A stretch of DNA of 64,000 nt from Epithemia pelagica. Lineage: Eukaryota > Protista > Bacillariophyta. Shown one piece after another: positions 22,037 to 44,700 of this stretch. How positions within the stretch are numbered: the first letter of the stretch is position 1; each line of letters begins with the position of its first letter. The notes under the pieces were generated by a model that was not told the origin of the DNA, searched no databases, and saw only the letters and a program-made list of their open reading frames with translations. The stretch is from contig OX337233.1 of assembly GCA_946965045.2 (NCBI GenBank), forward strand, positions 310,001 through 374,000, read 5' to 3'. The position numbers and the translations under genes were made by a program.

Positions 22037-23224
22037 TCAAGTTTCATCCTTTCCTTCATCACCACGGCGTGTATCGGGCCTTGCTCGTTTATGAGCTGAT
22101 GTCGAGGCGGAGAAGGGTGAATTATCAGCAAGTTGGATATTCCTTCCTTCCCGAAATAGACAACATCTGTCGATCTGATGCTCAAAGAGTCGTCGAAAAC
22201 ACCACGTATGCTTGTCCAGTAGTGGTAATGTCGCACAGGCAGAACTGCCAAAACCACTTATCACGGCAACATGATTGGCAACAATCGCCATACTGAAGTG
22301 ATCGCGGCGATTTCCGAATGGTGGGAGATTCCACACACGGTTGCGGTGCGTATCCAAGACGTCCACGGTTGAATCGCCTAGTCCTCCGGCCACTACCAAA
22401 CAGGATCCCACGGTAACCACTGCACAAGAACTTCGTGCATTGGAAAGCACCATATTAGAATGAGCGGTCCAGGTCGACGAGAAAGAAATGAACGTCGAGC
22501 CAGTTTCCTTTTTTGTCTCTTCATTGTCACCAGGCTTTGAAAATTCCAAATACTCCACCGAGCGTCCTGTGTAGCCTCCAACGGAGAAGATGCGGTTACC
22601 AATGACCACACTAGCACAATATGATCGAGGAATATTCATGCTTGGTCCCGCAGTGACAGTGTGGTTGTTTGTATCTATAATATCCACTGACGACAAATCA
22701 TGATCGTTGTAGCCGCCCATTACAACGATGTATCGGTTGTGAACCGCGACAGCACAACATCCAAACCGTCGCGTTGATAATCGACATGTCAATGTCGTCC
22801 AATTACTCGTATGTGTGGTGCTTGCTGTTAAAAATGGTTGTAGTATATCGTTCGCATCAATGCGTTCGATACAATCCAAAGTTGCTGTATTGCGACCTCC
22901 CATCACGTAGACGCCGCCATTGCACAAAACAGCGGCATGTCCTCGACGACTCTTGTTCATTGGTGGCCCCTCTCGCCACTGCTTGTCTGGGTCTGCCAAA
23001 TTTAATACAAGAATGGAATTGACCTCGCCATAACCTGTTCGATATCCGCCCAACACGACGACGGTTTGTTCCGTCTTGTTATCGGGATGATCGAGAACGA
23101 CCGAAGCATGATAGTAACGCCATCCACCCTCAAGAGGAGGCCAGTCCTCGAAATTCCATTCAGGTGTCTCGTCTAACAAAACAAGGCCCGACTGCCATGC
23201 TTGTTCTTTCATCGTCGTGGCCAT
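22037..23224 (-). CDS. Kelch-repeat protein (K6), head-to-head with the intact LRR-TIR gene
   Basis: ATG 23224 (MATTMKEQAWQ); frame open to 23416; HKRAR tail. Confidence 0.9.
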   Translation of the reverse strand: MATTMKEQAWQSGLVLLDETPEWNFEDWPPLEGGWRYYHASVVLDHPDNKTEQTVVVLGGYRTGYGEVNSILVLNLADPDKQWREGPPMNKSRRGHAAVLCNGGVYVMGGRNTATLDCIERIDANDILQPFLTASTTHTSNWTTLTCRLSTRRFGCCAVAVHNRYIVVMGGYNDHDLSSVDIIDTNNHTVTAGPSMNIPRSYCASVVIGNRIFSVGGYTGRSVEYLEFSKPGDNEETKKETGSTFISFSSTWTAHSNMVLSNARSSCAVVTVGSCLVVAGGLGDSTVDVLDTHRNRVWNLPPFGNRRDHFSMAIVANHVAVISGFGSSACATLPLLDKHTWCFRRLFEHQIDRCCLFREGRNIQLADNSPFSASTSAHKRARPDTRRGDEGKDET

Positions 23225-23678
23225 GGTTTCACAAAATGACTGCAGCAAATTTATGGGGATCGAGACACTGTCTTGTAAGAGGCACGTAGGTTTGCTCTTT
23301 CGTTGCGATGCTGATGCTGACGGGTACGGACTGGAAGCACGACTGACTTGACGAAAAGGATGGACCGAAGATGAGTCGCTTTCGTCACAAGACAAATCGT
23401 GACCGTAGCCACGCAATGAAGAAGATCACGCACTCTTGTTCGGAGTACCGTAGAAGTTTTATTGGATACCGGAATAAACTAGCATCCCAAATTTCAAATT
23501 TGAATCGTGACGCCAACCACCAACTGTCATTTCGACGCCGGCCCTTCCAATGGAAGGATTACTTAGACGCGTGGCAGGTGAGACGGGCGGTAGACTTCAC
23601 ACAGTAGAGTTAAGGTTTAGTCTGTCTGCTGTCCTTGTTTCTGCGGACCTCTAATGGCGAATTTGTTCCATCCTGCTA

Positions 23679-25388
23679 CGAGCTCCATCAATCGATATGG
23701 GTAACCGGTAACCGTAGTGGCCCGTGCTTCACGTTTCCGATACTCGGTTGAACTTCCGGCCCTACGAGATTCACTACACCATACATTTTCCTAAAGTAAA
23801 ATGAATTGCCCTCATGCTCTTGCACATTTTGTTGCGAGATTCTTCTCACCAACTGCACCCACACCATCACCATGGTGAGGCGGCGCTAGCACAATAATCA
23901 ACCCGCCTCCTCTACGAGTATGCATATAAACAGCTACTAGTACAGAACATCTATCTAGCTTAGTACATGCTTCTCTGTGTCGTAGGTCGTACAATAGGCA
24001 ATCGTTTCGGTGTTGAGTATGGTGCTGTTGCCGTGCCGTGGTCGCCGAATGTTTTGCCGTTTGGCCGAAACGAGCAGTTGATTGTTGAGTATGTCATTGT
24101 CGTCGGATGTCGCTGTCGTCGCTTGTCGTTGTCGCCGCTTGTCGTTGTTGCCGCTTGCTGTCTTGTCGCATGCCGTTGTCGTCGCTTGTCGTTGTCACCG
24201 CTTGCTGTTGTTGAAGGGCACAGTCTCGGGCAGAGGGTTCGGTGACAGCGAAAAGTTGATTGTTGCGTGGGGGTTGTTGTTGTTGCCGAGTGTTGTTTTT
24301 GTTGTTGTTTGTTCATTCGTTCGTTCGTTCGATCAGTGGCGGTGAGTAGTTGATTGTTGTGTTTGGATTTTTGTTGTCGCCGAGTGTTGTTGTTGTCGTT
24401 CATTCGTTCTTTCGTTCTTTCGTTCATTCGATCGATCAGCTGTGACATCGTCGCCGATTGTTTCGCCATTTGTAGTTGAGCCGCTTGTGGTTGTCGTTGT
24501 CGTCGCTTGTTACCACCAGTGGACGAGGCTTCGATTTGTTGGGTGAGGGCAACGAAAAGACGAGGAGTTGATTGTTTCGTCGCAAGGTAGAAGAAGGAGG
24601 ACGACCACACCATCTTGTCGCCGAGTCTTGCCGCCGAGTGTCGTTGTCGAGTGTTGTTGCCGAGTGTTGTTGTTGTTCGTTCGGTGGCAGCGAGGAGTGA
24701 GTAGTTGGTTGTTGTGTGTTTGGGTTTTGGGTTGTTGTTGTTGTTGCCGAGTGTTGTCGACTCGCAAGGCTCTTCGACCACCGCCCATCAGCTTCACGGC
24801 ATCCCCTCCTTCTTCCACTCAAATTGTGCTGTGGGAATCAGCCGCACCACCGGCACCACCATCGTCTGTCGCAGTAGAAGCAGTCCTTCCACCCACGGTT
24901 CACGTTTGTTTTGTCTGGACAAATCAGCTTTTGTTGCGTTTGAGCCACCAACGGTCGAGGCTTTCCAATGTTGTGCTCGGTCTATAAAGTAACGAGGAGT
25001 TGATTGCTGCATGCGGACGTATGATCGGTGACTTGCTGGATGCATTCTATCGGTTGTCGTCGTCTTCTTCTCAAGGTCACTTCCTCTGTTTCGGATGCCA
25101 AATAAGGAAGACTTCAAAACCTTGCCGTCGGTCCATAAAAAAAGCCAACTCATCCCTGCCCGCCCATTCCCTCACGGTACACTTGATTCTTAGGCATCCT
25201 TGATGGTCGCAAGAGAGCTGGCACCTTTCGTTGGAGGTGCACACCGGCTTGAGTGTGTCATGGTGGTGTTACGCAGTGCAAAATGACCGTAGTGGTGTCC
25301 CTACGAAGTTAGAATCACTGTAGAAAAAACAGTGGGGGTATGAAAAGCACGGGCCACTACGGTTACCCATATCGATTGATGGAGCTCG
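23679..25388. mobile_element. Non-autonomous DNA transposon (Tc1/mariner-like), 1710 bp
   Basis: About 44-bp terminal inverted repeats CGAGCTCCATCAATCGATATGGGTAACC(GGTAACC)GTAGTGGCCCGTGCTT at 23679-23729 and 25345-25388, flanked by TA on both sides. No transposase ORF. Confidence 0.8.
24060..24760. repeat. Low-complexity GTT/TCGT/GTC-rich array inside the TIR element
   Basis: Recurring GTTGTTGTTGCCGAGTGTTGT, GTCGTCGCTTGTCGTTGTC and (TCGT)n motifs. Confidence 0.85.
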
Positions 25389-26046: not shown

Positions 26047-26310
26047 TGTTGAGGATATGTGACCAGGCGACGAGTAGCAGCAAGCAGACGACGAGTAGCA
26101 GCGAGCAAGCAGCGACTCAAGAATGTGATTCGGAAGCAAAGGATCCAAACTTGAATGATGAACATGCCGAAGCGTGGACTTTAGTGCGTCGACGTGGCAA
26201 AAGCAACATTCGGCAAGATGAACAAGCAAGTGTTCATTCTAAGGAGATTACGTAGTTCGATAAGCCTATAAAGAGTTGCTTTTACGGCACGGCTTGTTTG
26301 AGTTTCAACA
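26047..26310 (+). repeat. 5' LTR of copia A
   Basis: TGTTGAGGAT...GAGTTTCAACA, identical to 32071-32334 by eye. Confidence 0.95.
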
Positions 26311-26324
26311 TAATCTCCTTAGAA
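26311..26324 (+). promoter_or_regulatory. Primer-binding-site position of copia A, complementary to its own LTR
   Basis: TAATCTCCTTAGAA is the exact reverse complement of LTR 26237-26250, TTCTAAGGAGATTA. Confidence 0.75.
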
Positions 26325-26371
26325 AGTAAAGCCTTATATCGTATCACAGACTGTGACGGGAACTACGGTAT

Positions 26372-27043
26372 ATGAGCGAGAGACGTGAAGCGCGTTGGCA
26401 AGATATATTGGCTCAATTGGCTCGGCTGACTCTCGAGGAACAAGAAGAGGTACACGCAATTGAAGAGCGCTTTCAACAAGAATACCGAAGAAGAGAAGCT
26501 CAACACCGTCAAACGGTGGCGGCACTTGAGCGTCAACGAGAAACGGATCGTGACAACGCATACGACGAGTGTGAGATTCGGAAGCAACTTGTGTTTGAAA
26601 AAGCTCAAGCAAAACGTGACAGCTTGTTGAGAGAAATCCAACACCTCGACGAGGACAAGACACCTGCCCCAGAACCCCGGTCAACTACACCGGATCCACC
26701 GGAACCATCAAGACAGGCAACGCCCGAAACAGAGGTAAAACAGACAGCTGGGCCAAGATTCCAAAACAGTACGCCTCAATCTCAAACAAGTCATCCAGTG
26801 CAAGTCGCACAGCCTCCTTCAATCGCATCGCAAAGAAACAGCCCCATCAGGTGGATCCCAATTGGAACTAGAGTGTGGGTACTCAATCCCCTCAAATTGA
26901 AGAATCAAGCCTCCACCACCCATCTTGAAGGAGTCATATCGAGACACGGTAGTTTCTACCATTTCATACGCATTTGGAATCCATCTACGGGGAAACACGA
27001 AGAACATCGTCGACACCGAGACAGCCTAGCTGTAGTCGAATAA
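26372..27043 (+). CDS. Additional ORF upstream of gag in copia A (coiled coil, Pro/Ser/Thr linker, small beta-barrel-like C-terminal domain)
   Basis: 223-aa ORF with an E/R/Q-rich helical N-terminus and C-terminal IPIGTRVWVLNP...EGVIS...FIRI...HRRHRDSLAVVE. Its stop is 1 nt before the gag ATG (TAA G ATG). Confidence 0.75.
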   Translation: MSERREARWQDILAQLARLTLEEQEEVHAIEERFQQEYRRREAQHRQTVAALERQRETDRDNAYDECEIRKQLVFEKAQAKRDSLLREIQHLDEDKTPAPEPRSTTPDPPEPSRQATPETEVKQTAGPRFQNSTPQSQTSHPVQVAQPPSIASQRNSPIRWIPIGTRVWVLNPLKLKNQASTTHLEGVISRHGSFYHFIRIWNPSTGKHEEHRRHRDSLAVVE

Positions 27044-27044
27044 G

Positions 27045-30000
27045 ATGTCGACTGGTGGGAACGGCCCTCGGCCGGATGGAGCAGAATCAAGCGGGGGACG
27101 AGGTAATCAAACGGGCGGTCGATCCAATGGAGGCAGAGGACGAGGAGGTCGTGGCAAAAACCAAGGCCAACAATCAAACACTCGCTTTCAGGGCCAAGAA
27201 CCATCGTTGAAAGATTGCGTGTTTGATTACAGTGAAGATCCCCAGTCCAAGCGGTACCTACGCAACGTTGAGTTGTTAGTGGGCTACGTGGGGACATCAT
27301 TTGACTACTACAACCTAGAGTATCAAAAGGCGCTGGAGAAATTGGAACTTAAAGATCCAGAGAAAGCAAAGGTTCCAGATGATCCCACAGACCCCATTCA
27401 GATGGAAGAATGGAAAATGGAGTACAAGGCGAGAAAGGATCAAGTGAAGGCCTATCGCAACTTTCGCGCTTCCTTGTTCAGTGTCATTCTAGGGCAATGC
27501 ACGCCCCTCATGAAGGACAAGTTGCAAGCCAAACCAGAATATGAAGCTATCAACGATGAAAGGGACGGTGTGGCTCTACTCAAGTTGATCAAACAAACAA
27601 CCTTCACGTTTGATTCCGGCCGAATCTACAAGCTGGTCGGTCGCGACAAGTTGAAAGAAGAGTTTTATGGCTTGAAACGCAGAAACAATCAAACCCTACA
27701 CAGCTATTATGAAGTGTTTAGGGCAAAAGTGAAAGTTCTCAATGAGGTCGGTGTGGTGTTGTATGATAAAGATCTCGTGGAGATGATTGCCAAGAAAAAT
27801 GGAAGGGACACTCCAGCATCTATAGATCGTGACGAAGCACAAGAGAGATGTGTGGCAATCCGATTCATTCGAACATGTGGCCATCGCGAGTACGAGGCCC
27901 ATTTGCAAAACATGTTTTTGGACGGACACAAAGATGTGTACCCTGCCACTTTGGCGGATGCAAGGGCAATTCTTGATAACCGCATGACAGGTAAACAGAA
28001 GCAACCGAATCAAAACCAACAAACTCCGACTGAGAATGCCACTGGCATGGCATACCATACACAAGAGTTGGACGACAGCAATGAAAGCCAAGCAGCGTCC
28101 ACATTGACTGGTAACAGCCACATGACAACAAACTCACGACAAACCCAGAGTCGCAATGGGAGTGGCAACAATAGCCGAGGAAGAGAACAAGCGAGTACAG
28201 GCAACGGTCAATCACGAGGTCATGAATCAAATCAAACACAAACCAACAATAATGGTGAATTGAATGAGACCAATGAATCAACCGGCCTGCAGGACACGCA
28301 TCGTGACTCACTTCAATATTCTTTTTCTGCTTCTTCTTCACAGGCTAGCATATCCCCAGAATGGCTACTCCTCGACAACCAATCGACTGTAGACATCATC
28401 CGAGACTCCACCCTCCTCAAGAATATTCACACAGCCGAGCGCCCAATCATGATCCAAAGTCACGCTGGGCGACGTCAAATTTCCAAACAAGGCCTACTCC
28501 CCGGATATGGCATCGTTTGGCATGACCCGAAAGGGCCGGCCAACATCATATCACTCAATAATGCACGCACAAGGTTCTCAATCAAGTATGACAGCGAGAA
28601 CGGGAACACATTCAATCTCTTCGACCGATCTTCAGGGCGACTCAAACACCAATTCCTGCCAAGTCAAGACGGTTTGTTCTATATGGATACGTCAAGAATG
28701 CAGAGTAGTCTCATCACTACGGTTAATGATAATGAATCTGCTTATTCTCAAGACGAAGTCTATAGAGCTAAACTGGCACGATCATTAATGGCCAAGATAG
28801 GTCGTCCATCCACACGTGATTTCGTACACATCATACGAAACAATCTGTTGCCGAACACAACGATCACTGTGGACGACGTCAAGAGGGCCGAGAAAATATA
28901 CGGGCCAGACCTTGGAAGTCTCAAGGGCAAGACGACACGTCGTAAATCGCCTGTGGTTAACTCGTCACAGACCGTACCACCACGGATCAAAGAAGAACAC
29001 AAGGATGTGACACTCACTGTTGATATTCTTCACGTCAACAACATTCCTTTCCTCGCAACGACGTCAAGGAAGTTGCATTTTGGGACTATGGAAGCAATGG
29101 CCAATACCACCGACGATGATGTCATGAACTCGTTGCGCAGAGTGGTTGCGATCTATCGCAGAGGTGGCTTGCGCCCGCGGATGTTGCTCGCGGACGGAGC
29201 TTTCTGTTCCGAAAAGATGAAGACAGAGTTGCAATTGATCGGAGTATTGTTAAACCCAACCGCAAGAGATGAACATGTGGGAGACATTGAACGGTACATA
29301 CGTACAGTAAAAGAAAGAATGAGATGTGTTTATAACACCCTACCATTCAAAGAAATCCCGAAGGTCATGATCATTGAGATGGCCAAATTCGCTACCTTCT
29401 GGCTAAATAGTTTCCCTCATCGGTTGGGGATTTCACAATCAGAAAGCCCACGACTGCTCGTGACGGGAGAACAGGTCGACTTCAACAAGCACTGTCGCTT
29501 CGAATTTGGACAGTACGTCCAATGTCATGAAGAACATGACAACTCGATGGCGCCCAGGACCATAGGTGCTCTAGCATTGAGGCCTACTGGGAATCGTCAG
29601 GGTAGTTATTATTTTTTGAGTCTTGTCAGCGGACGAGTCATAACACGGAACCACGCCACAGCCCTACCGATGCCCCAAGAAGTGATCCAACGTGTGCACC
29701 AATTGGCTAGAGCCCAAAATATGCAACCAGGGTTAGCTTTCGGTAATAGAGATAATCGGATTTTGTGGATGGATCAAGACAACGACCTTTACAACGAAGA
29801 AGACGATGAATCCTACATCAATGATGAACAGGAGGACATCGAGCTACGCTATGATGATGATATGATCGAAGATGAACTGGTGGGTGCCGACAATTCTGAA
29901 GAAGATGTCAACGGCGAACCTGCAATCAACCCGATGTTTGGTCCCGATGACCAACACATGGAAATTCAAGGAGTGGGTGACCCACTAGCCGGAGAACTTG

Positions 30001-32279
30001 ACCTGAACGGTCCGGAAATTGAAGGAGTGGAGGCAGATGGAGAACTGCCAATCCATCCTATGGCAGAAGATGATGGTAGTGCAGTCCCGGAGGAGGCAGT
30101 GATGGATGTGGAGGAGGATGTAGAGGAGAATGAGGGGGAGCTAGCCGGTGGAGAGGATATGGAAGAGGGACAAGACATACAAGACATTGACGCTAATGAA
30201 GGTACCGAAGACAACAGTGCGGCTGATCCGGTACGTCAGCATCATCAACATCAACAACAACAACAACAACAACACAGGTACAATCTACGACCAAATCGTG
30301 AAAGGAGCTACGCGCACCGATATGGGCATTCGTTTGCCTGCATCGATACTCTAAAAGGAGGGCGTTATGATGGAATCCTTCGAGATGGAGTGTTGTTTCT
30401 TGTAGCGAGTGAGGTGAATCAAGCCACACCGCAGATGCCTATGAAAAAGGGCATCAAACTGTTTGGAAACAAGGGAGTGGCCGCCGTGAAGGTGGAAATC
30501 CAACAATTGCATGATAGAGGAGTATTGAGGGCAGTACACAAAACTGACCTCAGCTGGAATGAGGTGCAACAAGCACTAGGTTACCTAATGTTTTTGAAAC
30601 GAAAACGGTGTGGCAAGATTAAAGGAAGAGGCTGTGCCGACGGACGCAAACAACGTGCGTACATAGAGAAGGAAGATTCAGCTTCTCCTACCGTGGCCAC
30701 CGATTCTGTATTCATTACTGCCGTCATTGATGCCCTAGAACGACGTGTGGTTGCTGTGGCAGACATCCCAGGTGCGTTTATGCACTCGGATATGGATCCT
30801 GGCGTCTACATGCGGCTTAATGGACTTATGGCTGAGCTACTCCTAGAAGTCGACCATGAAGCATATGCCCCATATCTAACATATGAGAAGGGCGAGCCGG
30901 TTATATACGTGGAAATGTTGAAGGCTCTCTACGGGACGTTGCGTGCAGCTCGTCTCTTCTGGGAAAAATTGACCGTGGTGCTCAAAAGTTGGGGATTTCA
31001 AATCAACCCCTATGATTCCTGCGTTGCAAACAAAACAATCAACAACAAACAATGCACGGTAACTTGGCACATTGACGATCTAAAAATATCGCATGTGGAC
31101 GGTGCCGTTGTAACCAAATTTATTGAGGACCTCAAAGCAGAGTTCGGCCAGTTGGGAGAAATCTCTGTGTCGGAAGGAACAAGGCACGACTATTTGGGCA
31201 TGTTCTTAGACTATGGAGAGGATGGGGTTGTGCAGGTGGACATGAGGTCCTACCTGGACACCATTTTGATCTCGCTACCGAAAGAATGGATCGGTAAAGC
31301 ACGGTCACCCGCTGCTAAGCATTTATATCATACGGACCCGAACTCTCGAAAACTCAATGAGGAGGAGGCGGATCGATTCCACAGTGTAACAATGCAGCTA
31401 GCGTACATGGCGCAAAGAGGACGCCCAGATATACGCACTGCTGTGGCCTTTTTGAGCACTCGTGTCATGAATCCAGACGTTGATGATCAGAGAAAACTCG
31501 GTCGGGTTCTCAAGTACCTACAATCAACCAAGGATCTGATCCTACGACTAGAGGGTGATGGATCTGGAACACTCTGTTGGTGGGTGGACGCCTCCTTCGC
31601 TACTCACCCAGACATGAAAGGACAGACCGGTGGAGTAATGACTATGGGCAAGGGTGCCGTCATGACTGCCTCATCAAAACAAAAACTTGTGGCGCGAAGT
31701 TCAACCGAATGTGAATTGATAGGCGTGCACGACGTGTTGCCGTCGATGTTATGGAGCCAGAACTTTCTGAGAGCCCAAGGACATGAAGTAAAGAACGTTG
31801 TCCTGCACCAGGACAATCAAAGCAGTATCCTACTGGAACGAAACGGTCGGTTGTCGAGCTCGAAAAGAACCAAACACATCAATCTACGATATTTCTATAT
31901 CACAGATTGCATTCGCCGAAAGGACGTGAATGTGCGTTTCTGCCCGACGGATGAGATGATCGCTGACTTCTTTACTAAACCATTGCAGGGTCAAGCTTTT
32001 TATCGCCTGCGGGATATCATCATGAATGTGGTCCCGAGTAGTAAGTATCACTCCTCGGCCCAAAGGAGTGTGTTGAGGATATGTGACCAGGCGACGAGTA
32101 GCAGCAAGCAGACGACGAGTAGCAGCGAGCAAGCAGCGACTCAAGAATGTGATTCGGAAGCAAAGGATCCAAACTTGAATGATGAACATGCCGAAGCGTG
32201 GACTTTAGTGCGTCGACGTGGCAAAAGCAACATTCGGCAAGATGAACAAGCAAGTGTTCATTCTAAGGAGATTACGTAG
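27045..32279 (+). CDS. gag-pol: Gag-Pol polyprotein of copia A, intact, 1744 aa
   Basis: PR (LLDNQST), integrase (VDILHV, HVGDIERYIRTVKER), RT (KIKGRGCADG, DIPGAF, WHIDD), RNase H (WVDASF, DNQS, RTKHI). Reads into the 3' LTR. No CCHC knuckle. Confidence 0.95.
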   Translation: MSTGGNGPRPDGAESSGGRGNQTGGRSNGGRGRGGRGKNQGQQSNTRFQGQEPSLKDCVFDYSEDPQSKRYLRNVELLVGYVGTSFDYYNLEYQKALEKLELKDPEKAKVPDDPTDPIQMEEWKMEYKARKDQVKAYRNFRASLFSVILGQCTPLMKDKLQAKPEYEAINDERDGVALLKLIKQTTFTFDSGRIYKLVGRDKLKEEFYGLKRRNNQTLHSYYEVFRAKVKVLNEVGVVLYDKDLVEMIAKKNGRDTPASIDRDEAQERCVAIRFIRTCGHREYEAHLQNMFLDGHKDVYPATLADARAILDNRMTGKQKQPNQNQQTPTENATGMAYHTQELDDSNESQAASTLTGNSHMTTNSRQTQSRNGSGNNSRGREQASTGNGQSRGHESNQTQTNNNGELNETNESTGLQDTHRDSLQYSFSASSSQASISPEWLLLDNQSTVDIIRDSTLLKNIHTAERPIMIQSHAGRRQISKQGLLPGYGIVWHDPKGPANIISLNNARTRFSIKYDSENGNTFNLFDRSSGRLKHQFLPSQDGLFYMDTSRMQSSLITTVNDNESAYSQDEVYRAKLARSLMAKIGRPSTRDFVHIIRNNLLPNTTITVDDVKRAEKIYGPDLGSLKGKTTRRKSPVVNSSQTVPPRIKEEHKDVTLTVDILHVNNIPFLATTSRKLHFGTMEAMANTTDDDVMNSLRRVVAIYRRGGLRPRMLLADGAFCSEKMKTELQLIGVLLNPTARDEHVGDIERYIRTVKERMRCVYNTLPFKEIPKVMIIEMAKFATFWLNSFPHRLGISQSESPRLLVTGEQVDFNKHCRFEFGQYVQCHEEHDNSMAPRTIGALALRPTGNRQGSYYFLSLVSGRVITRNHATALPMPQEVIQRVHQLARAQNMQPGLAFGNRDNRILWMDQDNDLYNEEDDESYINDEQEDIELRYDDDMIEDELVGADNSEEDVNGEPAINPMFGPDDQHMEIQGVGDPLAGELDLNGPEIEGVEADGELPIHPMAEDDGSAVPEEAVMDVEEDVEENEGELAGGEDMEEGQDIQDIDANEGTEDNSAADPVRQHHQHQQQQQQQHRYNLRPNRERSYAHRYGHSFACIDTLKGGRYDGILRDGVLFLVASEVNQATPQMPMKKGIKLFGNKGVAAVKVEIQQLHDRGVLRAVHKTDLSWNEVQQALGYLMFLKRKRCGKIKGRGCADGRKQRAYIEKEDSASPTVATDSVFITAVIDALERRVVAVADIPGAFMHSDMDPGVYMRLNGLMAELLLEVDHEAYAPYLTYEKGEPVIYVEMLKALYGTLRAARLFWEKLTVVLKSWGFQINPYDSCVANKTINNKQCTVTWHIDDLKISHVDGAVVTKFIEDLKAEFGQLGEISVSEGTRHDYLGMFLDYGEDGVVQVDMRSYLDTILISLPKEWIGKARSPAAKHLYHTDPNSRKLNEEEADRFHSVTMQLAYMAQRGRPDIRTAVAFLSTRVMNPDVDDQRKLGRVLKYLQSTKDLILRLEGDGSGTLCWWVDASFATHPDMKGQTGGVMTMGKGAVMTASSKQKLVARSSTECELIGVHDVLPSMLWSQNFLRAQGHEVKNVVLHQDNQSSILLERNGRLSSSKRTKHINLRYFYITDCIRRKDVNVRFCPTDEMIADFFTKPLQGQAFYRLRDIIMNVVPSSKYHSSAQRSVLRICDQATSSSKQTTSSSEQAATQECDSEAKDPNLNDEHAEAWTLVRRRGKSNIRQDEQASVHSKEIT

Positions 32280-32334
32280 TTCGATAAGCCTATAAAGAGT
32301 TGCTTTTACGGCACGGCTTGTTTGAGTTTCAACA
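32071..32334 (+). repeat. 3' LTR of copia A
   Basis: Identical to the 5' LTR; ends 22 bp upstream of the LRR-TIR ATG. Confidence 0.95.
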
Positions 32335-32356
32335 GAATCATATATCTATTAAAACG

Positions 32357-35300
32357 ATGACAACAACGACTTTCGACCTCAACGAGCCAATGGACCGCAC
32401 CATGCCTCTTCCAGAAACGACAATGGACGTAAACAACCCTGAAATGAACGAATGCGATCCATATCAATTGCGACGTACCCGGATCAGCCCCAAGATGAAA
32501 CAACGAATGGTGGAGCACTTTGGGAAAGAACCGTTTTTGCCAAGATTGACCAACACCAAAGCCACTGACCGCACTGCACAAGCCATTCTCGATTTTGATA
32601 GAGACGTCAGGGGCAGAGGACGTGCTAATGTGGATTGGTCCAAGCTGTCGCTCCGCCATTCGGATATCGGTGACGTGGGCATTGAAGCGCTCGCCCGTGT
32701 TTTTGTTAAAACGACAACAAACCGAGATCCTGAGCTGAGATTGTATTTCGTAAAAGCCCTGGACGACGAAATGGCGGTTCGGTTGGCGAATGCTATGGAT
32801 CAAAATCCGTCCTGGGAGAAGTTGTCTATTCAGCACTGCAATTTTGGATTGCGTGGATGGAAAGCACTGGTTGGTGCTTTGGGCAACAATCACGTTTGGC
32901 AGGAGTTGGAGCTTGTTAGTACGAACCTTGAAGATGAAGGAGTTGAAGCACTGGCAAAAGCACTGCAACAAAATACCCAATGGACCAACTTCGAGCTCTG
33001 GGACATACAGTTTTCTTCTGTGAATGGAGTCAAAGCCTTGGTTGAAGCCTTGAGTGTCAACAAAACATGGAAATCTTTCCAACTTGAGGTACGATTTGGT
33101 ACACGGGTTCCGAGGATCCGCGACTGTGAAATGGAAGCATTGTCACATGCCTTGCGTTGCAATCAATGCTGGGAAACGTTTAGCTATACATTTCCCTCTG
33201 ATTTTGATGGAGGACTGGGATCCGTTACCAGAACACTGCATGGCAACTCAGTCTGGCGAGTGTTTGATATGGATTTAGAAAAGGCAACACATGTCGACAT
33301 ACTAGCCGAGGCTCTCCGTCGACAAACCTCTTGGAAATATTTTGCTTTGAGTCTCCCTTATGGCACTCCCGACCAAGGGGTGGAAATGTTGGCCAATCTA
33401 CTAAAAACGTCACCAAGCTGGGAACGGTTTGTTTTACATGTGCGAGGTCAAGAAGTTTGGTCATGGCTCAAGGTTGGTCCAGCCATTCTCCAACGGTTGG
33501 AGAAAAACTGGAACTCATTGGTGCTTTGGTTTCCATACTCGAACAACAACCCCATTCAGCACCTGCCCTTTCTGCTAGAGAACCATCCAGACGAAATTGG
33601 AGTGACGGAAGAAACAATTTCAAATTTCTTCCTCACAAATCATGAAAAAGCAACCGATGCCCTGGAAATGGCAGAGTATTTGGGACAATGCTGGCAATCC
33701 ATGGATTTGTGCATGCTGCCATCGAACGAGGCACTCCGTGTCGGTCGACCGTTTACCATTCCTCGAACCATTTCACTTCACCACACGCCACGGTTGACGT
33801 TTCTAGCAGCCCTTGGACTGATCCAGTCAATTCAAGGTGATGGTGCAACGGCAGAGAACATTGACAGCACCAATGCTTCTATAGCATCAGCCGCTCTTGG
33901 ATCTAGACCAAAAGGCAATGTCCATTGGTTTCGTTTGTCGTTGAGTCATCTGGACATTGGGGAGGACGGAGCCAATGCCATTGCGGAGATGTTGCAAAGG
34001 AACACAAACTGGCAAATCTTGGACCTGGCCAATTCGGATCTTGATGATCCTGGTGTAAAGGCGCTGGTAAATGGGATGAAGAGCAATTGTGATTGGCGTT
34101 GTATGAATCTGTCTCATATCAAGATCAGCCAACAGGGAGCACATGATTTAGGAATAGCGTTGTCTCGTAACACCACGTGGTCAAGTTTTTCCGTTTCCAA
34201 CATGCCAATGGTCACTGGTGAAGGAGTGATCGACTTGGTTTGGGGTATCGCGCGTCGATCGTGGCATACTCTTGATCTCGGGTTCACGAACATGTCCGAT
34301 CTTGGTCTCAGTGCGTTGTTACAAGCTCTGACGTCATCAAAGACATGGCGACACTTGCGATTGGCACATACTGATGTTGGAGACGATGGCATGATTTCCC
34401 TGTCCACGGCATTGCAGCAAAATTCCGGGTGGCGTTTGTTTGATGTTGGAAATACGAACATGTCGGATCATGATATGAAACAGGTTTCGAAAGCATTAAA
34501 AAAGAACGTCAATTGGCTTACCTATGATGTAAGCCATAGCAATCAACCGCACCTAGAAGCACAGGCGGTCGCAGGGATCACACATACTAGTCCAACATGG
34601 GAATCAATTCAATACAGGTCGCCCAACCGCCCGTTGTTGTTGGCATCCGGTCGCTCGGAGGTCTCAAACGATCAAGAAGCTAGTACAGTCATCAAGAGCA
34701 ACTGTCAATTGCCATCGGCTACCATGAACAGCAGCGGACAGGGAGAAATTGTTGCGCAAATCGGTAACAAACTGCAGTGTTTGGATACAATTCTCAGGCA
34801 TGCCATTGAATATGGTGCAACGCTGATCGTCGAATTAGATTCAATGTCTTCAATGAGCTTTGTCAAGCTTGGCAAGCGCCTCCTAAAAGTATCTGACGCT
34901 CTTGGAAGGATTAATACGCTCCGACTTCAGATGACATCAGGAAAAGAGGACCTGGAACAGTTGAATCCTCAAAGATTGAAGACAGTTCAAGATATTATGT
35001 CATTTGGAATCGATTTGGCAAAGATGATGCTCGACAAGGTACCTTCTGCAAACCAAAAACCAAAATACCACGTTTTCATTTCGTTTGCCGGGGAAGTTCG
35101 AAAAGAGCTCGAGTTTGACTATGTGACCAGTTTGGAGGATCAGTTGCAAATCGCGGCTGGTGGTGGCAACATACTCAATATCTTTGTGGCAGAAAAAACA
35201 ATGCATGCCGGACACCAATCTTATCCGCTTGTTACCATGTTGACGAACGCTCTTACAGCGCGAGTTGTGGTTTGTGTGACATCGACACACTATGTTCAAA

Positions 35301-35882
35301 AGAAATGGTGTATCGCTGAGCTATTGTGTGCTTTGGCGCGGAACGAGACTGTTTGCCCCTGGACGGGTGTCAGTCGAGTGATTGTGGATGCCTTTCCAGG
35401 ATGTCATTGGGTCCTCCCGTCTTCTCCCGCTACAGCGAGTGCGTCACTTCTAGTTTCGCCAAAGAACCCAATTGATAGACCTATTAGTAGAAGCGCCAAC
35501 AAGTGGCTTGATGATTTCAGTGGTCTGTTCCCAACCCAACTACCAATCATGCAAATTTGTGAAATCACTGGCGAAAATGTGTATGGTAAGTGTTGCAGCG
35601 CAACTTTCGGCAGGAATAATTCATGTGTGACTTCTTGAACTCGACCTAAGCGAATGTCTTGTTTTTGTTGCTACTATGGACTTGAACGGAACAGATTCCA
35701 GATACAAACAGTTGGTTGGTCACATGGAAGAGGTCGCAAAAGAGGTGATCTCTTGTTTAAAACTCCGTCAGGAACACGCTCTCTCAAATAGACGAGAGCG
35801 TCGGTGCAACGACGATGATACCTCGCACCAGGATCCTTCGCCTAGGGAAAGGAAACGACACAAACCTTCCAAGAATGACTGA
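32357..35882 (+). CDS. LRR (RNI/NLRC3-like) protein with C-terminal TIR domain, about 1138 aa; exons 32357-35585 and 35695-35882
   Basis: Two blocks of about 28-aa repeats W-x2-L-x-L-x4-(I/L)-x-D-x-G-x2-AL-x2-AL-x2-N. TIR core YHVFISFAGE...IFVAE...VVVCVTSTHYVQKKWCIAEL, with Glu codon at 35318-35320. Predicted phase-1 intron GTAAGT(35586)...AACAG(35694) joins ENVY to DSRYKQLVGHMEEVAKEVISCL. Basic tail RERKRHK. Confidence 0.85.
35586..35694 (+). other. Predicted spliceosomal intron, 109 bp
   Basis: GTAAGT donor, T-rich tract, CAG acceptor; restores the frame into ORF 35676-35882. Confidence 0.7.
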
Positions 35883-38127: not shown

Positions 38128-39353
38128 CTAGGTTACATCATTCCCTCTATCATTTTGGCATGTATTGGTCCTTGCTCGTTTACAAGTTAATGTCGATGTG
38201 GAGAAGGGTGAGATCTCAGCATCTCGATACCCGTGCCTTCAAGAGAATGATACCATCCGTTCGATGGCTGCTTACAGAGACGGCGAAAACACCACGAATT
38301 CCTATCCGGTAGTGGTAATGTTGCACAGGAAGGATTCTCCCATCCACCAATCATGGCAACTTGATTGGCAACAGTCACCATAGTGCAGCCATGGCGGTTA
38401 TGAGTGAATGGTGGGAGATTCCACAAGCGGTTGCGGTGCGTATCCAACACTTCCATGGTTGAATTGGTCCATCCTCCCGCCGCCACCAGACAAGATCCCA
38501 CGGCAACCATTGCGCAAGGACTTCGTGCATTGGAAAGCCGCAACTCCGAATGAGTGGTCTAGGTGGGTGAGAAAGAAATAAACATCGAGCCAGTTTCCTT
38601 TTTTGTCTCATCACTGTAACAGGGTGTTGCGTCGTCCAAATACTCCACCGCGTAAAGATTACCATGCTCATTACAGCCTCCAGCGACAAAGATGCGGTGA
38701 TCAATAACCGCACTGGCACATAATTGTCGAGGAACATTCATGGATGGTCCAGCAGTGACAATGTGATTGTTGGTATCAATAATATCCACTGACGAGAAAT
38801 AGCGATGGTTGTAATAGCCACCCATTACAACGATGTATCGATTTTGAACCGCAACAGCAGAACATCCTGATCGTCCCGTTGATAATCGACATGTCAATGT
38901 CGTCCAATTGCTCTTCTTCGAACTGCTTGATTTCGAAGATGGTTGGAGCAAATCGGTGACATTAATTTGTTCGATACAATCCAAACTTGAATATCTAGTG
39001 TATCCTCCCATCACGTAAACACCTCCATTGCACACAATACTGGCATGTCCTTCACGAATCTTGTCCATGGATGGTCCTTCTCGCCATCGCTTGTTTGTGA
39101 CTGCCAGATTCAATACAAGGACGGAATTGGTGCCACCTAGGCCTTGTTGACGTCCTCCCAACACGACGACGGTTTGTCTCTTTGGGTTGTCGTCGTTGCT
39201 GCTGTCCGTATCGGGATGATTAAGTACAACCGTAGCATGACGATAACGCCATCCACCCTCAAGAGGAGGCCAGTCTTCGAGATTCCATTCAGGTGTCTCG
39301 TCCAACAAAACAAGGTCCGACTGCCATGCTTGTTCTTTCAGTGTTGAGGTCAT
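38128..39353 (-). pseudogene. Kelch pseudogene (K7)
   Basis: ATG 39353; TGG>TAG nonsense at 38559-38561 (frame continues TTHSELRLSNAR); additional 1-bp frameshift near 38225. Confidence 0.85.
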
Positions 39354-39802
39354 GGTTCCACACAATGACTGCAGCGAATTTATGGGGATCGAGACACTGT
39401 CTTGTAAGAGGCACGTAGGCTTGCTCTACAGTTGTGATTCTGATGGGTGCGGACTGGAAGCACGACTGACTGCACGAAAGCGATGGACTAAAGAGGTTCG
39501 TCACGAGACAAATCGGGACAGTTGCTTCGACCGAGCTTTTGTTGTTGGCACTGCTCTTTTGTTGTTCCATCCTGCTAGTACTGGTGGTCAATGGTCGGAG
39601 TCCACAGCATGACACGGGCAAAGGTCAGTTTCGTCGCCCTGTTATGTTCGGGATGGGTCGTCCTAGTACAGTACACAGTGTCTCTCGCAAAGAACCCCAT
39701 CAATACGTCGCTCTTTTCCGCCACTGTCCGAGCCCTGCCAAACGCCCACGAGCTCCGCCAAACGCCCTTGGGAACTAGCATATCACAATGCCGCTCCTCC
39801 GC

Positions 39803-41701: not shown

Positions 41702-44700
41702 TGTTGGAATCTTCAATTGAGTCGCTCTTCATGTCGTGGTCCCGAATCAAGTCAGTCGCACAACGAGACAATGGGATGCAAACCGCATGGGAGGCGGTTA
41801 TAGCTCATCTAGGTCTTGGACCATCTCGATCTCATCTGGCATAACAACATTCTCTCAATCCTAGTCGTAATGCTCACTCTTTCTAAATCACTCAGTTTCG
41901 AAACCCTTTTGCATTACTTCTACGATTACCTTGCTTCTGTGCACAGAGGAGACCATCAGGGCCAATCTAGTGATCCAACATACTAGCTAGTATCGGTGAT
42001 TGCTTCATTGGTCCCCTTATCGATCGAAAGAGCGAAACTCGTGAGCACGGGATCAAGAAATCTGACGCTGTTGAATTGCTGAATCGAAAATCGGGACAGG
42101 AGTCTATCAGAACCACCAAGGTTTGAACTCTCTGATCGTGTGTTGTTGCTTTGTCGATTGTTTGACTGATATCATATCTATCTCATATCAATCATATCAA
42201 AATGGATCTTTCAAGTAGCGACAAGACCTCAACTACGATCAAGGTACCAACCTTTTCAGGAAAGAAGGCTGATTACCCCATTTGGTGGATGCGCTTCCGT
42301 TCTCATGCTCGTGTCCACAACTTCATCGGAGCTTTGTCCGATACACCAGAGAAGGAACTCCCAAGCACCGAACACGAACCAATTGACGAGTCGACAGACA
42401 GCGGAAAAGCCTCCAAGAAAGCACTGAATCGAAACGCCATGGCTGTTGCTTGCCTTAGCATGGCACTCCAAGCCGATGACGATTTGAAACTCGTGATGAA
42501 ATCCATCACATCTGACTGGCCAGGTGGTCGTGCTCACATCATCGTGAAAGGATTGTTCCGAAACTACAAAAGCGAAAACATAGCCGCCAAGATGCGAATC
42601 CGACAAGACGTGAACAAGATCTCCATGAGCAATACCATGAACCCCAAGATTCTTCGCAAGAAGATATCGCAGATTGAGAATCGCCATAACCATGAATTGG
42701 CTGACGACGATCTGGTAGCTATCGTGATTGAGAAAGCCGCACCGATCTACAGCACCATTGTTGCAACCGAACAGCGAGCAAAGGGAAGTGCCCTCACTGC
42801 AGATGACCTCATAGACGCGATGATGACCCAATGGAATCTACATCACGACGAAGATGATGATGGCGAGGATGGCACTGAATCAAGTCTCGATCAGTCCGCC
42901 AGTGGTGGATTGTCACTTCAAGTCACTCAAACAAATCCCGTCTGTCAAGCAGTCGGCGATCCCAATAGTGTTCCTCCACAGCCATTTGTTGTGTGCAATT
43001 TCTGCCAAGAACCAGGACATGGGTACTATCAATGCCCTCTTCGATCCCAAGCATCACAACAAGGAACCGGTACTGCATTGGCCGTTGGACCAGGACAGCA
43101 ACAATACCAGCAACAACAAGGATATCGCCCATACAACGGACAACAACAAGGCCAATGGCGACAGCCATATCAACAAGGCGATCGTCCACGCCCATACTGT
43201 GAGGATTGCAAAGTGTATGGCCATTCAACGCAGCGTTGCTGGGAGAATCCAGCTAATGCGCAATTTCGCCCACCCAATTGGACAAGTCGTCGCAATCGCC
43301 CTCAACAGGCTCCATCTCCAAGTCCTCCAACCAGTACACCAGCTCAAGACATCGCTACTGTTGTTGCGTCTAACACCACAACACGTCCGACAACTCCAAC
43401 CACTCCCAATGGACAGTCGACCCCATCATCAGAAACCCGTGTTGAGATGCTCATGAGCGGCATCGAATTTCCACATGACTTACAACTCCTTCGTGATCCC
43501 AACATCTGGATCGCGGATACTGGTGCTACACAGCACATGACTTCTCATACTCATGGAATCATCAATCTCCGACGACCAGAAGATCCTGTCAGTCTTGTTA
43601 TGGCCAATGATACCACAGAGAGCGCAACGGTAATCGGTGACTTACCAGGCATATGCTGCAACAGATACGGCTGCGAATTGCGGTCTGGTCAAATGTCCGG
43701 TGTCAATATCTTACCATCTACTGCTTTCAACCTGTTTAGCATCTCCAAGATGCTTAAACAGGGATGGTCCTTGAGTGGTTCGTCTGAAGCAATCATAATC
43801 ACCAAGGGAAGTATGAGTGTGACGTTCGACATTGTAATACCGACGCCTGACGGAATGATTTTCTGTTTGTATTTCAAGCGCAAGCAAGAACTTACCGGTC
43901 ATGAGATTTTCGGAGCATTACCTGACATTGGTCCCAAGAAACGACAAACCATGTCACTCCAGGACGCCCATGACAAACTTGGCCACATTGACATCCGCAA
44001 GATCAAACCAATAGTGGAACACCTTGGCTTTCAGTTGCAATCTGGAGAGATGGAGAAATGTGCTGCTTGTGCTGCTGGCAAAGCTCGTCGTAAGAATCTT
44101 CCTCGCTCTGACACTCATGCAAATTCCGAACCAGAAGATCCAAACGTCAATCGCATATACCTCGACATGAGTTCTGTCCGTCCCATCAAATCGCATCCAA
44201 CACCACGCAAGAATCAATGGCGAATGATTGTTCATGGCAGGACTCAACTAAAATTCTCAGCATTCTACGAGTCTAAGAAAGCAATGGTCGAACCGACTTG
44301 TGAATTTCTTCATCGATGGGAATCTAATGGACTTGGGGCGACTCATGTGCGTCTCGATAATGCCGGTGAAAATATTCTTCTTCAGTCGCGTAGTCAGTCT
44401 GCCGACTGGAAACTGAACCTTAACTTCGAATTCACTGCGCGTAATACCCCGCAACAGAACTCGCTTGCGGAAGTTGCAATTTCTACCATTGCTATGAGAG
44501 GTCGAGCCATGATGCATCGAGCAAATGTACCTATGGAATATCGCAGTCTATTGTGGACAACTGCCTTCGACACAGCCACATTATTAGATGGACTTGTAGT
44601 AATCGAACTGGATGGAGTCTCTAAAACACGATACGAACACTGGAGTGGGCAATTGCCCCGATTTGCGCATCATCTACGCACGTGGGGAGAAGCCGGAACT

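What the first reader, a model, noticed from the sequence alone, without database searches (positions are those of the whole stretch)
32357..35882. Soluble LRR-helical-TIR protein with intact catalytic glutamate and no NB-ARC/NACHT or TM segment
Seen: N-terminal RNI-like LRR solenoid, a helical linker, then a C-terminal TIR with WCIAEL (Glu at 35318-35320). No Walker A motif and no membrane-length hydrophobic helix were evident. Established: this Glu is the catalytic residue of NADase TIRs (SARM1, plant TNLs, bacterial Thoeris ThsB). Plant TNLs carry the TIR N-terminally with NB-ARC, and TLRs need a TM segment. Inference: an unusual LRR-gated TIR enzyme, closest in logic to SARM1, possibly a cell-death or signalling executor in an alga.
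Basis: partly seen in the sequence, partly recalled or inferred. Interest (0 to 1): 0.75.

Follow-up and report, generated by a model that had tools for sequence, protein, structure and literature searches.

The report
Diatom soluble LRR-TIR receptor-like gene
This is a real, intact gene of a diatom family that joins leucine-rich repeats to an immune-type TIR domain with no membrane span and no nucleotide switch; it looks like a new kind of innate-immune sensor, but no function has been tested.

Summary
Window 32357-35882 (+) encodes a two-exon protein of 1,138 residues. It has two blocks of RNI-type 28-residue LRRs, a predicted three-helix bundle and a C-terminal TIR domain. The TIR fold is supported by an AlphaFold model (pLDDT 85.7; VIA-align Z 12.2 to 10 against solved TIR domains). 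A family-only profile matches the Roq1 TIR at E 3.7e-10. W984 and E988 (codon 35318-35320) form the WxxxE motif, invariant in 39 of 39 aligned sequences (9 copies from this genome, 30 database hits) and aligned to the catalytic Glu of plant TIRs. There is no P-loop, NB-ARC, NACHT, SAM or membrane helix. The 109-nt intron is confirmed by 11 paralogs.

The genome holds about 17 loci of this family, 15 within 350 kb of contig ends, inside large Kelch gene arrays. The TIR is under purifying selection (omega 0.2-0.3). LRR block 1 is near neutral (0.65-1.0), with variation concentrated on the predicted binding face. Relatives are few (51 of 1.84 billion representatives) and include Epithemia clementina "hypothetical proteins".

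This copy has a very recent Copia insertion 22 nt upstream of its ATG. Enzyme activity and an immune role are inferred only. The scan had already found this family on other DNA of this genome (s1-230447, s1-252263, s1-230569 and others).

The parts
32357..35585 (+). Exon 1 (1,076 codons plus the first base of a split codon): LRRs, helix bundle and most of the TIR domain
   Evidence: Open frame with no stop. The twin copy on C13 is 99.4% identical. Database proteins P0001-P0009 match at 49-99%.
35586..35694 (+). Phase-1 intron, 109 nt, GT...AG
   Evidence: GT/AG kept in 11 paralogs. Lengths are 107, 108 or 109 nt, and every read-through contains a stop.
35695..35882 (+). Exon 2 (62 codons with the split codon, then the TGA stop): an amphipathic helix that probably forms TIR helix alphaE, followed by a basic tail
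   Evidence: 54-86% protein identity in 11 paralogs, kept in frame only if spliced. The alphaE assignment is inferred from TIR topology.
32624..33556 (+). LRR block 1 (residues about 90-400), RNI-type, about 11 repeats
   Evidence: Pfam LRR_6 and repeat anchors. omega is 0.65-1.0. Entropy at the predicted exposed positions is 1.10 against 0.53 elsewhere, p 3e-7.
33557..33916 (+). Conserved middle region (residues 401-520) with no family assignment
   Evidence: Mean entropy 0.49, as low as the TIR. omega is 0.27-0.39 in pairs whose dS could be estimated. No credible Pfam or ESM Atlas match.
33917..34681 (+). LRR block 2 (residues 521-775), nine repeats of exactly 28 residues
   Evidence: The number of repeats differs between paralogs.
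34772..35038 (+). Predicted three-helix bundle (residues 806-894) directly before the TIR
   Evidence: AlphaFold helices at model residues 2-23, 31-54 and 67-90, block pLDDT 86-98. Homologous in LRR-less and ankyrin-bearing relatives. Only generic bundle matches in the PDB.
35057..35585 (+). TIR domain, strands betaA to betaE (residues 901-1076)
   Evidence: VIA-align Z 12.2 (SPARTA TIR), 12.1 (AbTir), 10.6 (Hydra TRR-2), 9.9 (SARM1), 9.1 (RUN1) over model residues 97-272. Profile A3 against Roq1 TIR gives E 3.7e-10.
35306..35320 (+). WxxxE motif: W984 (35306-35308) and catalytic-type E988 (35318-35320)
   Evidence: Both residues are invariant in 39 of 39 aligned sequences. They align to WCLEEL of Roq1 and WCVREL of RPS4.
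35790..35873 (+). Basic tail RRERR...RERKRHKPSK, resembling a nuclear localisation signal
   Evidence: An RKRR motif (RKRRKP) is present in 9 of 12 paralog exon-2 peptides, and the window copy has RKRHKP. The function is inferred from the motif only.
26047..32334 (+). Copia-type LTR retroelement inserted 22 nt upstream of the ATG. LTRs at 26047-26310 and 32071-32334; 4-bp target duplication GAAT.
   Evidence: The LTRs are 100% identical. Pfam RVT_2. The site is empty in the C13 twin and in two further paralogs, with homology resuming exactly at 32335.
22037..23416 (-). Upstream Kelch propeller gene, head-to-head with the LRR-TIR gene
   Evidence: Pfam Kelch_1 E 1.3e-24. One of about 10 Kelch copies in the window.
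38223..39455 (-). Downstream Kelch propeller gene, tail-to-tail with the LRR-TIR gene

Best explanation
The gene encodes a cytosolic or nucleo-cytosolic receptor-like protein of a diatom family. Its order is RNI-type LRR block 1, a conserved middle region, LRR block 2, a three-helix bundle, then a TIR domain of the plant/bacterial enzyme type.

The proposed mechanism is inferred, not shown. The variable concave face of LRR block 1 would bind a non-self or modified-self ligand. Binding would relieve an inhibited state or bring molecules together, perhaps through the helix bundle, which is always coupled to the TIR in relatives. The assembled TIR domains would then use the W984/E988 site to cleave NAD+ or make a nucleotide signal, leading to defence signalling or cell death.

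The family lies near chromosome ends, is mosaic and undergoes birth-and-death turnover, as immune receptor families do. This particular copy has an intact reading frame. However, a very recent Copia insertion has separated it from its native upstream region by 6.3 kb, so its expression is uncertain.
For: Shown:
- LRR_6 E 3e-15, and the nearest LRR relatives are NACHT-LRR proteins.
- TIR fold at Z 10-12 with every top row a TIR domain, from a model with pLDDT 85.7 and pTM 0.86.
- Family-only profile against Roq1, PdTIR, RPV1, RUN1 and AbTir at E 4e-10 to 3e-6.
- W and E invariant in 39 of 39 aligned sequences. ESM Atlas neighbours are TIR clusters at 0.94.
- TIR omega 0.20-0.34 against LRR block 1 omega 0.65-1.0.
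- Variation in LRR block 1 sits on the canonical exposed positions, p 3e-7.
- 15 of 17 loci lie within 350 kb of contig ends, binomial P about 1e-8. TTAGGG arrays were listed at both ends of contig C1, and about 2,700 matches occur genome-wide.
- The gene is embedded in Kelch arrays.
- Intact, truncated and frameshifted copies coexist, and some copies are mosaics.
- No membrane helix, signal peptide or P-loop.
- The helix bundle plus TIR module is kept in relatives that carry LRRs, ankyrin repeats or no sensor domain.
Against: - There is no transcript, protein or activity data.
- The catalytic Glu is necessary but not sufficient for NADase activity. Scaffold TIRs share the fold.
- The single-sequence Pfam TIR score is borderline, and Foldseek E-values were only 0.01-0.1.
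- The model lacks exon 2. Residues 209-242 and 265-272 of the model have low confidence.
- omega near 1 in LRR block 1 could reflect relaxed constraint or gene conversion rather than positive selection. The exposed-position set was fixed from the canonical LRR motif, but after I had seen the data.
- LRR block 2 shows no such pattern.
- Nothing links the protein functionally to the Kelch neighbours.
- The Copia insertion may silence this copy.
Confidence: 0.6

Rival explanations
1. The TIR acts as a scaffold. The protein would signal by TIR-TIR assembly that recruits partners, as in TLR/MyD88/MAL, without enzymatic turnover of NAD+.
For: Structural matches to adaptor TIRs are as good as those to enzyme TIRs: MAL Z 10.4, MyD88 Z 10.0-10.2, TRR-2 Z 10.6. 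Fold alone does not discriminate between the two.
Against: The WxxxE pair is invariant across 39 of 39 aligned sequences. The profile is closest to the enzyme-type plant and bacterial TIRs, not to animal adaptor TIRs; TLR1 is only marginal at E 1e-3. The genome's other TIR proteins were not surveyed here for adaptors.
Confidence: 0.15
2. This particular copy is a newly disabled or silenced allele. The family may be functional, but the Copia insertion 22 nt upstream of the ATG uncouples the gene from its promoter, and the open frame survives only because the event is so recent.
For: The LTRs are 100% identical. The site is empty in the 99.4%-identical C13 twin, and the native upstream sequence now lies 6.3 kb away. 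Many paralogs are already truncated or frameshifted.
Against: The reading frame, both splice sites and the catalytic motif are intact. A 3' LTR pointing into the gene can supply a promoter. No expression data exist either way.
Confidence: 0.3
3. The family has a non-immune role. It could serve self/non-self or mating-type recognition, or stress-triggered programmed cell death and NAD metabolism, rather than pathogen sensing.
For: Chromosome-end location, copy-number flux and variable surfaces also mark allorecognition and mating systems. Nothing in the data ties the family to a pathogen.
Against: In bacteria, plants and animals, TIR domains with the catalytic Glu joined to repeat sensors act in defence or injury-induced death (established knowledge). 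In the coccolithophore G. huxleyi, TIR genes respond to virus infection (PMC12489294).
Confidence: 0.15
4. The LRR-TIR protein and the neighbouring Kelch propeller genes form a paired sensor-executor module, with Kelch proteins as the variable sensors and the LRR-TIR as a shared executor.
For: A Kelch gene lies within the fetched 6 kb of 8 of 17 paralog loci, head-to-head in 7 of them. The window holds about 10 Kelch copies. Earlier notes of the scan report the same arrangement.
Against: Kelch genes outnumber LRR-TIR loci by far: 969 first-look candidates against about 17 loci. Adjacency therefore follows from both families living in the same chromosome-end arrays and being copied together. 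No co-variation or interaction was tested.
Confidence: 0.15

Closest known systems
Plant TIR-NB-LRR (TNL) immune receptors such as Roq1, RPP1, RUN1 and RPS4
   Same: These are the closest TIR sequences: Roq1 E 3.7e-10, RPV1 2e-8, RUN1 7e-8 with the family-only profile. The SF-x-GE and W-x-x-x-E motifs are shared, and a variable LRR domain is present. The basic tail recalls the nuclear TNLs. The gene family is clustered and fast-evolving.
   Different: The domain order is reversed, with the TIR at the C-terminus. There is no NB-ARC switch. The LRRs are the RNI/animal-NLR type (LRR_6), not the plant-specific type. A three-helix bundle precedes the TIR.
SARM1 (ARM-SAM-SAM-TIR NADase)
   Same: Both are soluble, have a C-terminal enzyme-type TIR and have an N-terminal repeat domain that could hold the TIR inactive. 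Structural match Z 9.3-9.9.
   Different: There are no SAM or ARM domains. SARM1 is not hit by the family-only profile at E 1e-3. The resemblance is one of logic, not of descent.
Toll-like receptors (LRR-TM-TIR)
   Same: The N-to-C order is the same, LRR then TIR, and the TIR fold matches (TLR1, TLR10 and TLR15 at Z about 8).
   Different: There is no signal peptide and no membrane helix. The LRRs are the cytoplasmic RNI type without LRRNT or LRRCT caps. The TIR is closer to plant and bacterial enzyme TIRs.
Bacterial defence TIR proteins (AbTir, PdTIR, SPARTA TIR-APAZ, Thoeris ThsB)
   Same: These give the best structural scores: SPARTA Z 12.2, AbTir Z 12.1. The WxxxE motif is shared. PADLOC and NCBIfam give only weak hits to TIR parts of defence proteins.
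   Different: The gene is eukaryotic, with a spliceosomal intron. The partner domains differ. There is no operon context.
Epithemia clementina hypothetical proteins KAL7561740.1 and KAL7558674.1
   Same: They have the same LRR_6, helix bundle and TIR architecture and pass the Pfam TIR_2 (both) or TIR (the first only) threshold. These are the only named members of the family found.

Membership tests
TIR domain superfamily (Pfam PF01582 / PF13676) | Significant profile match to TIR models or to solved TIR sequences | tested here: met
   For the window protein, PF01582 scores 22.2 bits against a cut-off of 21.3, and TIR_2 scores 22.1 against 28, so it falls short there. Relatives P0023, P0025 and P0026 pass. 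The family-only profile A3 hits the Roq1 TIR at E 3.7e-10 and 19 further TIR chains.
TIR domain superfamily (Pfam PF01582 / PF13676) | Flavodoxin-like alpha/beta fold in the order betaA-alphaA through betaE-alphaE | tested here: met
   AlphaFold model pLDDT 85.7. VIA-align Z 12.2 to 10, with 113-131 residues aligned at rmsd 2.6-3.5, and all top rows are TIR domains. Helix alphaE is not in the model because it lies in exon 2.
Enzyme-type (NADase) TIRs | Catalytic Glu at the start of alphaC, in a W-x-x-x-E context | tested here: met
   E988 and W984 are invariant in 39 of 39 sequences. E988 aligns to the Glu of WCLEEL in Roq1 and WCVREL in RPS4.
Enzyme-type (NADase) TIRs | Glu-dependent NAD+ cleavage or nucleotide-signal synthesis | not testable with these tools
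   This needs a biochemical assay.
RNI-like / NLR-type LRR (Pfam LRR_6) | 28-29-residue repeats matching LRR_6 | tested here: met
   LRR_6 E 3.1e-15. There are 21 anchors, and block 2 has an exact 28-residue period. The nearest non-family hits are NACHT-LRR proteins.
NLR / STAND receptors (NB-ARC or NACHT) | Central P-loop NTPase domain with a Walker A motif | tested here: not met
   No NB-ARC, NACHT or AAA hit at E 0.1. No Walker A pattern. The only unassigned internal stretch is about 120 residues and matches nothing.
Toll-like receptors | Signal peptide, extracellular LRR domain and one membrane helix before the TIR | tested here: not met
   The maximum 19-residue hydropathy is 1.52 and lies inside the TIR core. 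The N-terminus is polar. No dedicated membrane-helix predictor was available.
SARM1 family | ARM repeats plus tandem SAM domains before the TIR | tested here: not met
   No SAM or ARM Pfam hit. SARM1 is absent from the A3 profile hits at E 1e-3.
Thoeris ThsB and other catalogued anti-phage TIR systems | Match to a defence-system model over its full length | tested here: not met
   PADLOC gives only PDC-S66 at 21.7 bits and RT-TIR at 13.7 bits, both over the TIR part. NCBIfam gives retron-TIR at 20.9 bits against a cut-off of 600.

The most novel reading that the evidence does not exclude
Diatoms have an NLR-like innate immune receptor class that works without any nucleotide-binding switch. In it, a hypervariable RNI-type LRR sensor is coupled through a three-helix bundle to a plant/bacterial-type TIR NADase. 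The genes are kept as fast-turnover chromosome-end families next to hundreds of hypervariable Kelch genes. This would be an independently evolved intracellular immune system in a major group of marine primary producers.
Probability: 0.35. Interest if true: 0.85.

Novelty: new variant of a known kind. Interest (0 to 1): 0.66.

Why it matters
Diatoms fix a large share of ocean carbon and are killed by viruses, oomycetes and chytrids, yet almost nothing is known about how they sense infection.

A soluble LRR-TIR with an intact catalytic motif, a variable predicted binding face and a chromosome-end birth-and-death family is a concrete, testable candidate for such a sensor.

It would also show that a repeat sensor and a TIR enzyme can be coupled without the STAND/NOD switch of plant and animal NLRs, without the membrane span of TLRs and without the SAM hub of SARM1. 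That bears on how often TIR-based immunity was reinvented.

I found no paper describing this architecture in diatoms in six full-text searches. The only named relatives are annotated as hypothetical proteins. A 2025 study of the coccolithophore G. huxleyi states that its TIR genes lack LRR or NBS domains (PMC12489294).

Tried and rejected
- AlphaFold on the TIR region with only 12 paralogs gave pLDDT 40 and was unusable. It worked after adding distant relatives.
- The paralog-only profile A1 hit just one PDB chain, PdTIR at E 0.003.
- The larger alignment A2 gave E 6e-22 to Roq1, but it includes a few plant-like sequences. I therefore repeated the search with the family-only set A3 and quote that result.
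- Foldseek gave only E 0.01-0.1, although every top row was a TIR domain.
- The three-helix bundle has only generic matches such as BAG, spectrin and GAT at Z about 8, below the level that means anything for helical bundles.
- The conserved middle region matched nothing.
- The exon 2 profile found nothing in distant relatives.
The planned scan of 10 kb either side of every paralog for Kelch genes, with control regions, was therefore replaced by the 6-kb loci already held and the coordinate list.
- I considered and rejected TLR-like, NLR and SARM1 membership (see the membership tests).
- I considered that the N-terminus might be LTR-derived. It is not: homology to paralogs resumes exactly at the LTR edge.
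- Six literature searches found no description of diatom soluble LRR-TIR proteins or of Kelch arrays near diatom chromosome ends.
Full report
**Gene model**

The window has a 1,112-codon open frame at 32300-35638 (+) with the first ATG at 32357. A gtaagt donor follows codon 1,076 at 35586, and a cag acceptor ends at 35694. The 109-nt intron is phase 1, and the downstream frame runs to TGA at 35880-35882. That gives a protein of 1,138 residues.

Eleven paralogs in the same genome keep GT and AG at the same places. Their introns are 107, 108 or 109 nt, so all three length classes modulo 3 occur. Every read-through runs into a stop. Exon 2 stays 54-86% identical at protein level. This is strong comparative evidence for a real intron.

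Database gene models such as P0001 read through the donor and so end the protein wrongly. As the scan's operators asked, I searched the two exons separately by reference. I did not build or submit the joined sequence.

**Domains**

Pfam gives LRR_6 at E 3.1e-15 and a borderline TIR: PF01582 scores 22.2 bits against a cut-off of 21.3, over residues 903-996 only. The repeat anchors (W-x-x-L-x-L) fall into two blocks. Block 1 covers about residues 90-400. Block 2 covers residues 521-775 and has nine repeats of exactly 28 residues. The nearest non-family LRR matches are NACHT-LRR proteins, so these are the cytoplasmic RNI/NLR type of LRR.

There is no Walker A pattern and no NB-ARC, NACHT, SAM or ARM match. 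The highest 19-residue hydropathy mean is 1.52 and lies inside the TIR core, and the N-terminus is polar.

**Is the TIR real?**

On the single sequence the evidence is weak: RPS4 TIR at E 0.02, and PADLOC and NCBIfam hits of 14-22 bits. An AlphaFold run with 12 paralogs failed, at pLDDT 40. Because the family scans left the call open and the novelty claim depends on relatives, I ran the exhaustive profile search.

That search found only 51 proteins with E of 1e-3 or better among 1.84 billion representatives. The hits split into two groups:
- A close group with a W-P-[ILM]-A-E-L motif. It includes LRR-TIR proteins (P0023, P0025, P0026), an ankyrin-TIR protein (P0030) and many short proteins with a helical region plus TIR.
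- More distant hits with plant-type W-C-L-x-E-L motifs; the one scanned, P0047, has TIR plus NB-ARC, a plant TNL architecture.

With a 39-sequence alignment the model reached pLDDT 85.7 and pTM 0.86. It shows three long helices (model residues 2-90) followed by a beta-alpha domain (97-272).

- Foldseek's top rows were all TIR domains, but at E 0.01-0.1.
- VIA-align gave Z 12.2 (SPARTA TIR), 12.1 (AbTir), 10.6 (Hydra TRR-2), 9.9 (SARM1) and 9.1 (RUN1), with 113-131 residues aligned.
- The search that does not depend on Foldseek gave the same picture.
- A profile built only from family members (A3, 26 sequences) hits the Roq1 TIR at E 3.7e-10, PdTIR at 1e-9, RPV1 at 2e-8 and AbTir at 3e-6. It does not hit SARM1 at E 1e-3.
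- ESM Atlas neighbours are TIR clusters at 0.94.

W984 and E988 (GAG at 35318-35320) are invariant in 39 of 39 aligned sequences. E988 aligns to the catalytic Glu in the WCLEEL or WCVREL motif of plant TIRs.

By TIR topology, the model ends after betaE. The amphipathic helix at the start of exon 2 (YKQLVGHMEEVAKEVISCL) is in the place of alphaE. This is an inference.

**The helix bundle**

The region before the TIR (residues 806-894) is homologous in relatives that have LRRs, ankyrin repeats or nothing upstream. The conserved unit is therefore the bundle plus the TIR. Its PDB matches (BAG, spectrin and similar, Z about 8) are generic.

**Family and genomic setting**

The genome (60.5 Mb, 23 contigs) has about 17 loci with this TIR. 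Fifteen lie within 350 kb of a contig end, with binomial P about 1e-8 against a 22% expectation. Copies created by segmental duplication are not independent, so that figure overstates the significance. TTAGGG arrays sit at both ends of contig C1, the only contig listed, and the genome-wide match count implies many more such ends.

Copies fall into three states:
- Six have a full open frame: this one, and copies on C13, C7, C10, C17 and C20.
- Others are truncated or frameshifted.
- Some are mosaics. For example, the C6:227 kb copy is 99.3% identical to this gene over its first 424 residues and 44-59% identical afterwards.

The window holds about 10 Kelch propeller genes or fragments on the minus strand, plus three Copia elements. 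The Kelch family has 969 first-look candidates, nearly all near contig ends. A Kelch gene lies within the fetched 6 kb at 8 of 17 paralog loci, head-to-head in 7 of them.

**Selection**

Pairwise Nei-Gojobori estimates give omega 0.20-0.34 for the TIR and 0.27-0.39 for the middle region. For LRR block 1, omega is 0.65-1.0 among the closer paralogs.

dS differs several-fold between segments of the same pair, which indicates gene conversion.

In LRR block 1 the framework positions are almost invariant. The canonical exposed x positions have mean entropy 1.10 against 0.53 elsewhere (Mann-Whitney p 3e-7). LRR block 2 shows no such contrast. I fixed the exposed-position set from the standard LRR motif, but after seeing the profile.

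**State of this copy**

Two 264-bp LTRs at 26047-26310 and 32071-32334 are 100% identical and have TG...CA ends. Homology to the C13 twin and to two other paralogs stops exactly at 26046 and resumes at 32335. The twin has the uninterrupted site with a single GAAT.

A 6.3-kb Copia element therefore entered 22 nt upstream of the ATG after the last duplication. The coding sequence is untouched. Whether the gene is still transcribed, from the LTR or otherwise, is unknown.

**Taxon and literature**

The only named relatives are two "hypothetical proteins" of the diatom Epithemia clementina.

Six full-text searches found no description of soluble LRR-TIR proteins in diatoms or of Kelch arrays near diatom chromosome ends. 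A 2025 study of the coccolithophore G. huxleyi reports virus-responsive TIR genes with the conserved Glu. It says they lack LRR or NBS domains and that TIR-based antiviral systems had not been described in microalgae (PMC12489294).

**Relation to earlier notes of this scan**

Earlier readers and follow-up agents noted the same family on other pieces of this genome. They described it as LRR-TIR genes embedded in variable Kelch arrays near chromosome ends, with several broken copies. I tested those claims independently here and agree with them. What this report adds:
- The confident TIR model and the family-only profile result.
- The conserved intron and exon 2.
- The bundle-plus-TIR module.
- The Epithemia relatives.
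- The Copia insertion specific to this copy.

**Verdict**

It remains inference for activity and role, and it should be re-anchored from SARM1 to plant/bacterial-type TIRs.

The most likely mechanism, at confidence about 0.6, is ligand sensing by the variable LRR face that triggers assembly of an enzyme-type TIR.

**Limits**

There are no expression data. 

Noticed in passing
window 26047-32334: A Copia-type element with 100% identical 264-bp LTRs (TGTTG...CAACA), a 4-bp target duplication GAAT and a 1,744-residue gag-pol open frame. The site is empty in the C13, C10 and C6:227 kb paralog loci, so the insertion is very recent and the element may still be active.
   Followed up: yes
window 42202-47334 and 56421-62009: Two further Copia-like elements. 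One has a 1,710-residue open frame. In the other, the 1,108-residue ORF at 57801-61127 carries RVT_2, gag_pre-integrase and Pol beta-barrel matches. The array is rich in transposable elements.
   Followed up: partly
window 2014-54697, minus strand: About ten Kelch propeller genes or fragments, 60-67% identical to each other, all on the minus strand. The genome-wide first look found 969 candidates, almost all near contig ends, and many have in-frame stops.
   Followed up: partly
window 35790-35873 (exon 2): The C-terminal tail RRERR...RERKRHKPSK resembles a bipartite or monopartite nuclear localisation signal. An RKRR motif (RKRRKP) is kept in 9 of 12 paralog exon-2 peptides.
   Followed up: partly
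L030 (G000:C6:223000-229000): This is a mosaic paralog. Its first 424 residues are 99.3% identical to the window gene and the rest only 44-59%, with a frame change at the junction. This is evidence of recent ectopic recombination or gene conversion between copies.
   Followed up: partly
window 35695-35882 versus L021 (C13 twin): The window copy and its twin are 99.4% identical through exon 1, but only 64% identical in the exon 2 peptide. The window's exon 2 is 86% identical to those of the C6:227 kb and C11:3.35 Mb copies, so the 3' end appears to have been swapped.
   Followed up: partly
window 24086-24748: Low-complexity direct repeats (units of 16 and 31 nt, GTCG/TTG-rich) with strong AT skew lie in the region between the upstream Kelch gene and the LRR-TIR gene. 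Their function is unknown, and they overlap minus-strand ORFs of doubtful reality.
   Followed up: no
proteins P0030 and P0045 (metagenome or Logan contigs): Relatives of the same bundle-plus-TIR module carry other sensor domains. P0030 has N-terminal ankyrin repeats. P0045 has the TIR first and LRR_1 repeats after it. The module appears to have been shuffled onto different repeat sensors.
   Followed up: partly
window 33557-33916: A 120-residue region between the two LRR blocks is as conserved as the TIR (entropy 0.49; omega 0.27-0.39 where dS could be estimated). It matches no Pfam family, and its ESM Atlas scores are only 0.81.
   Followed up: partly
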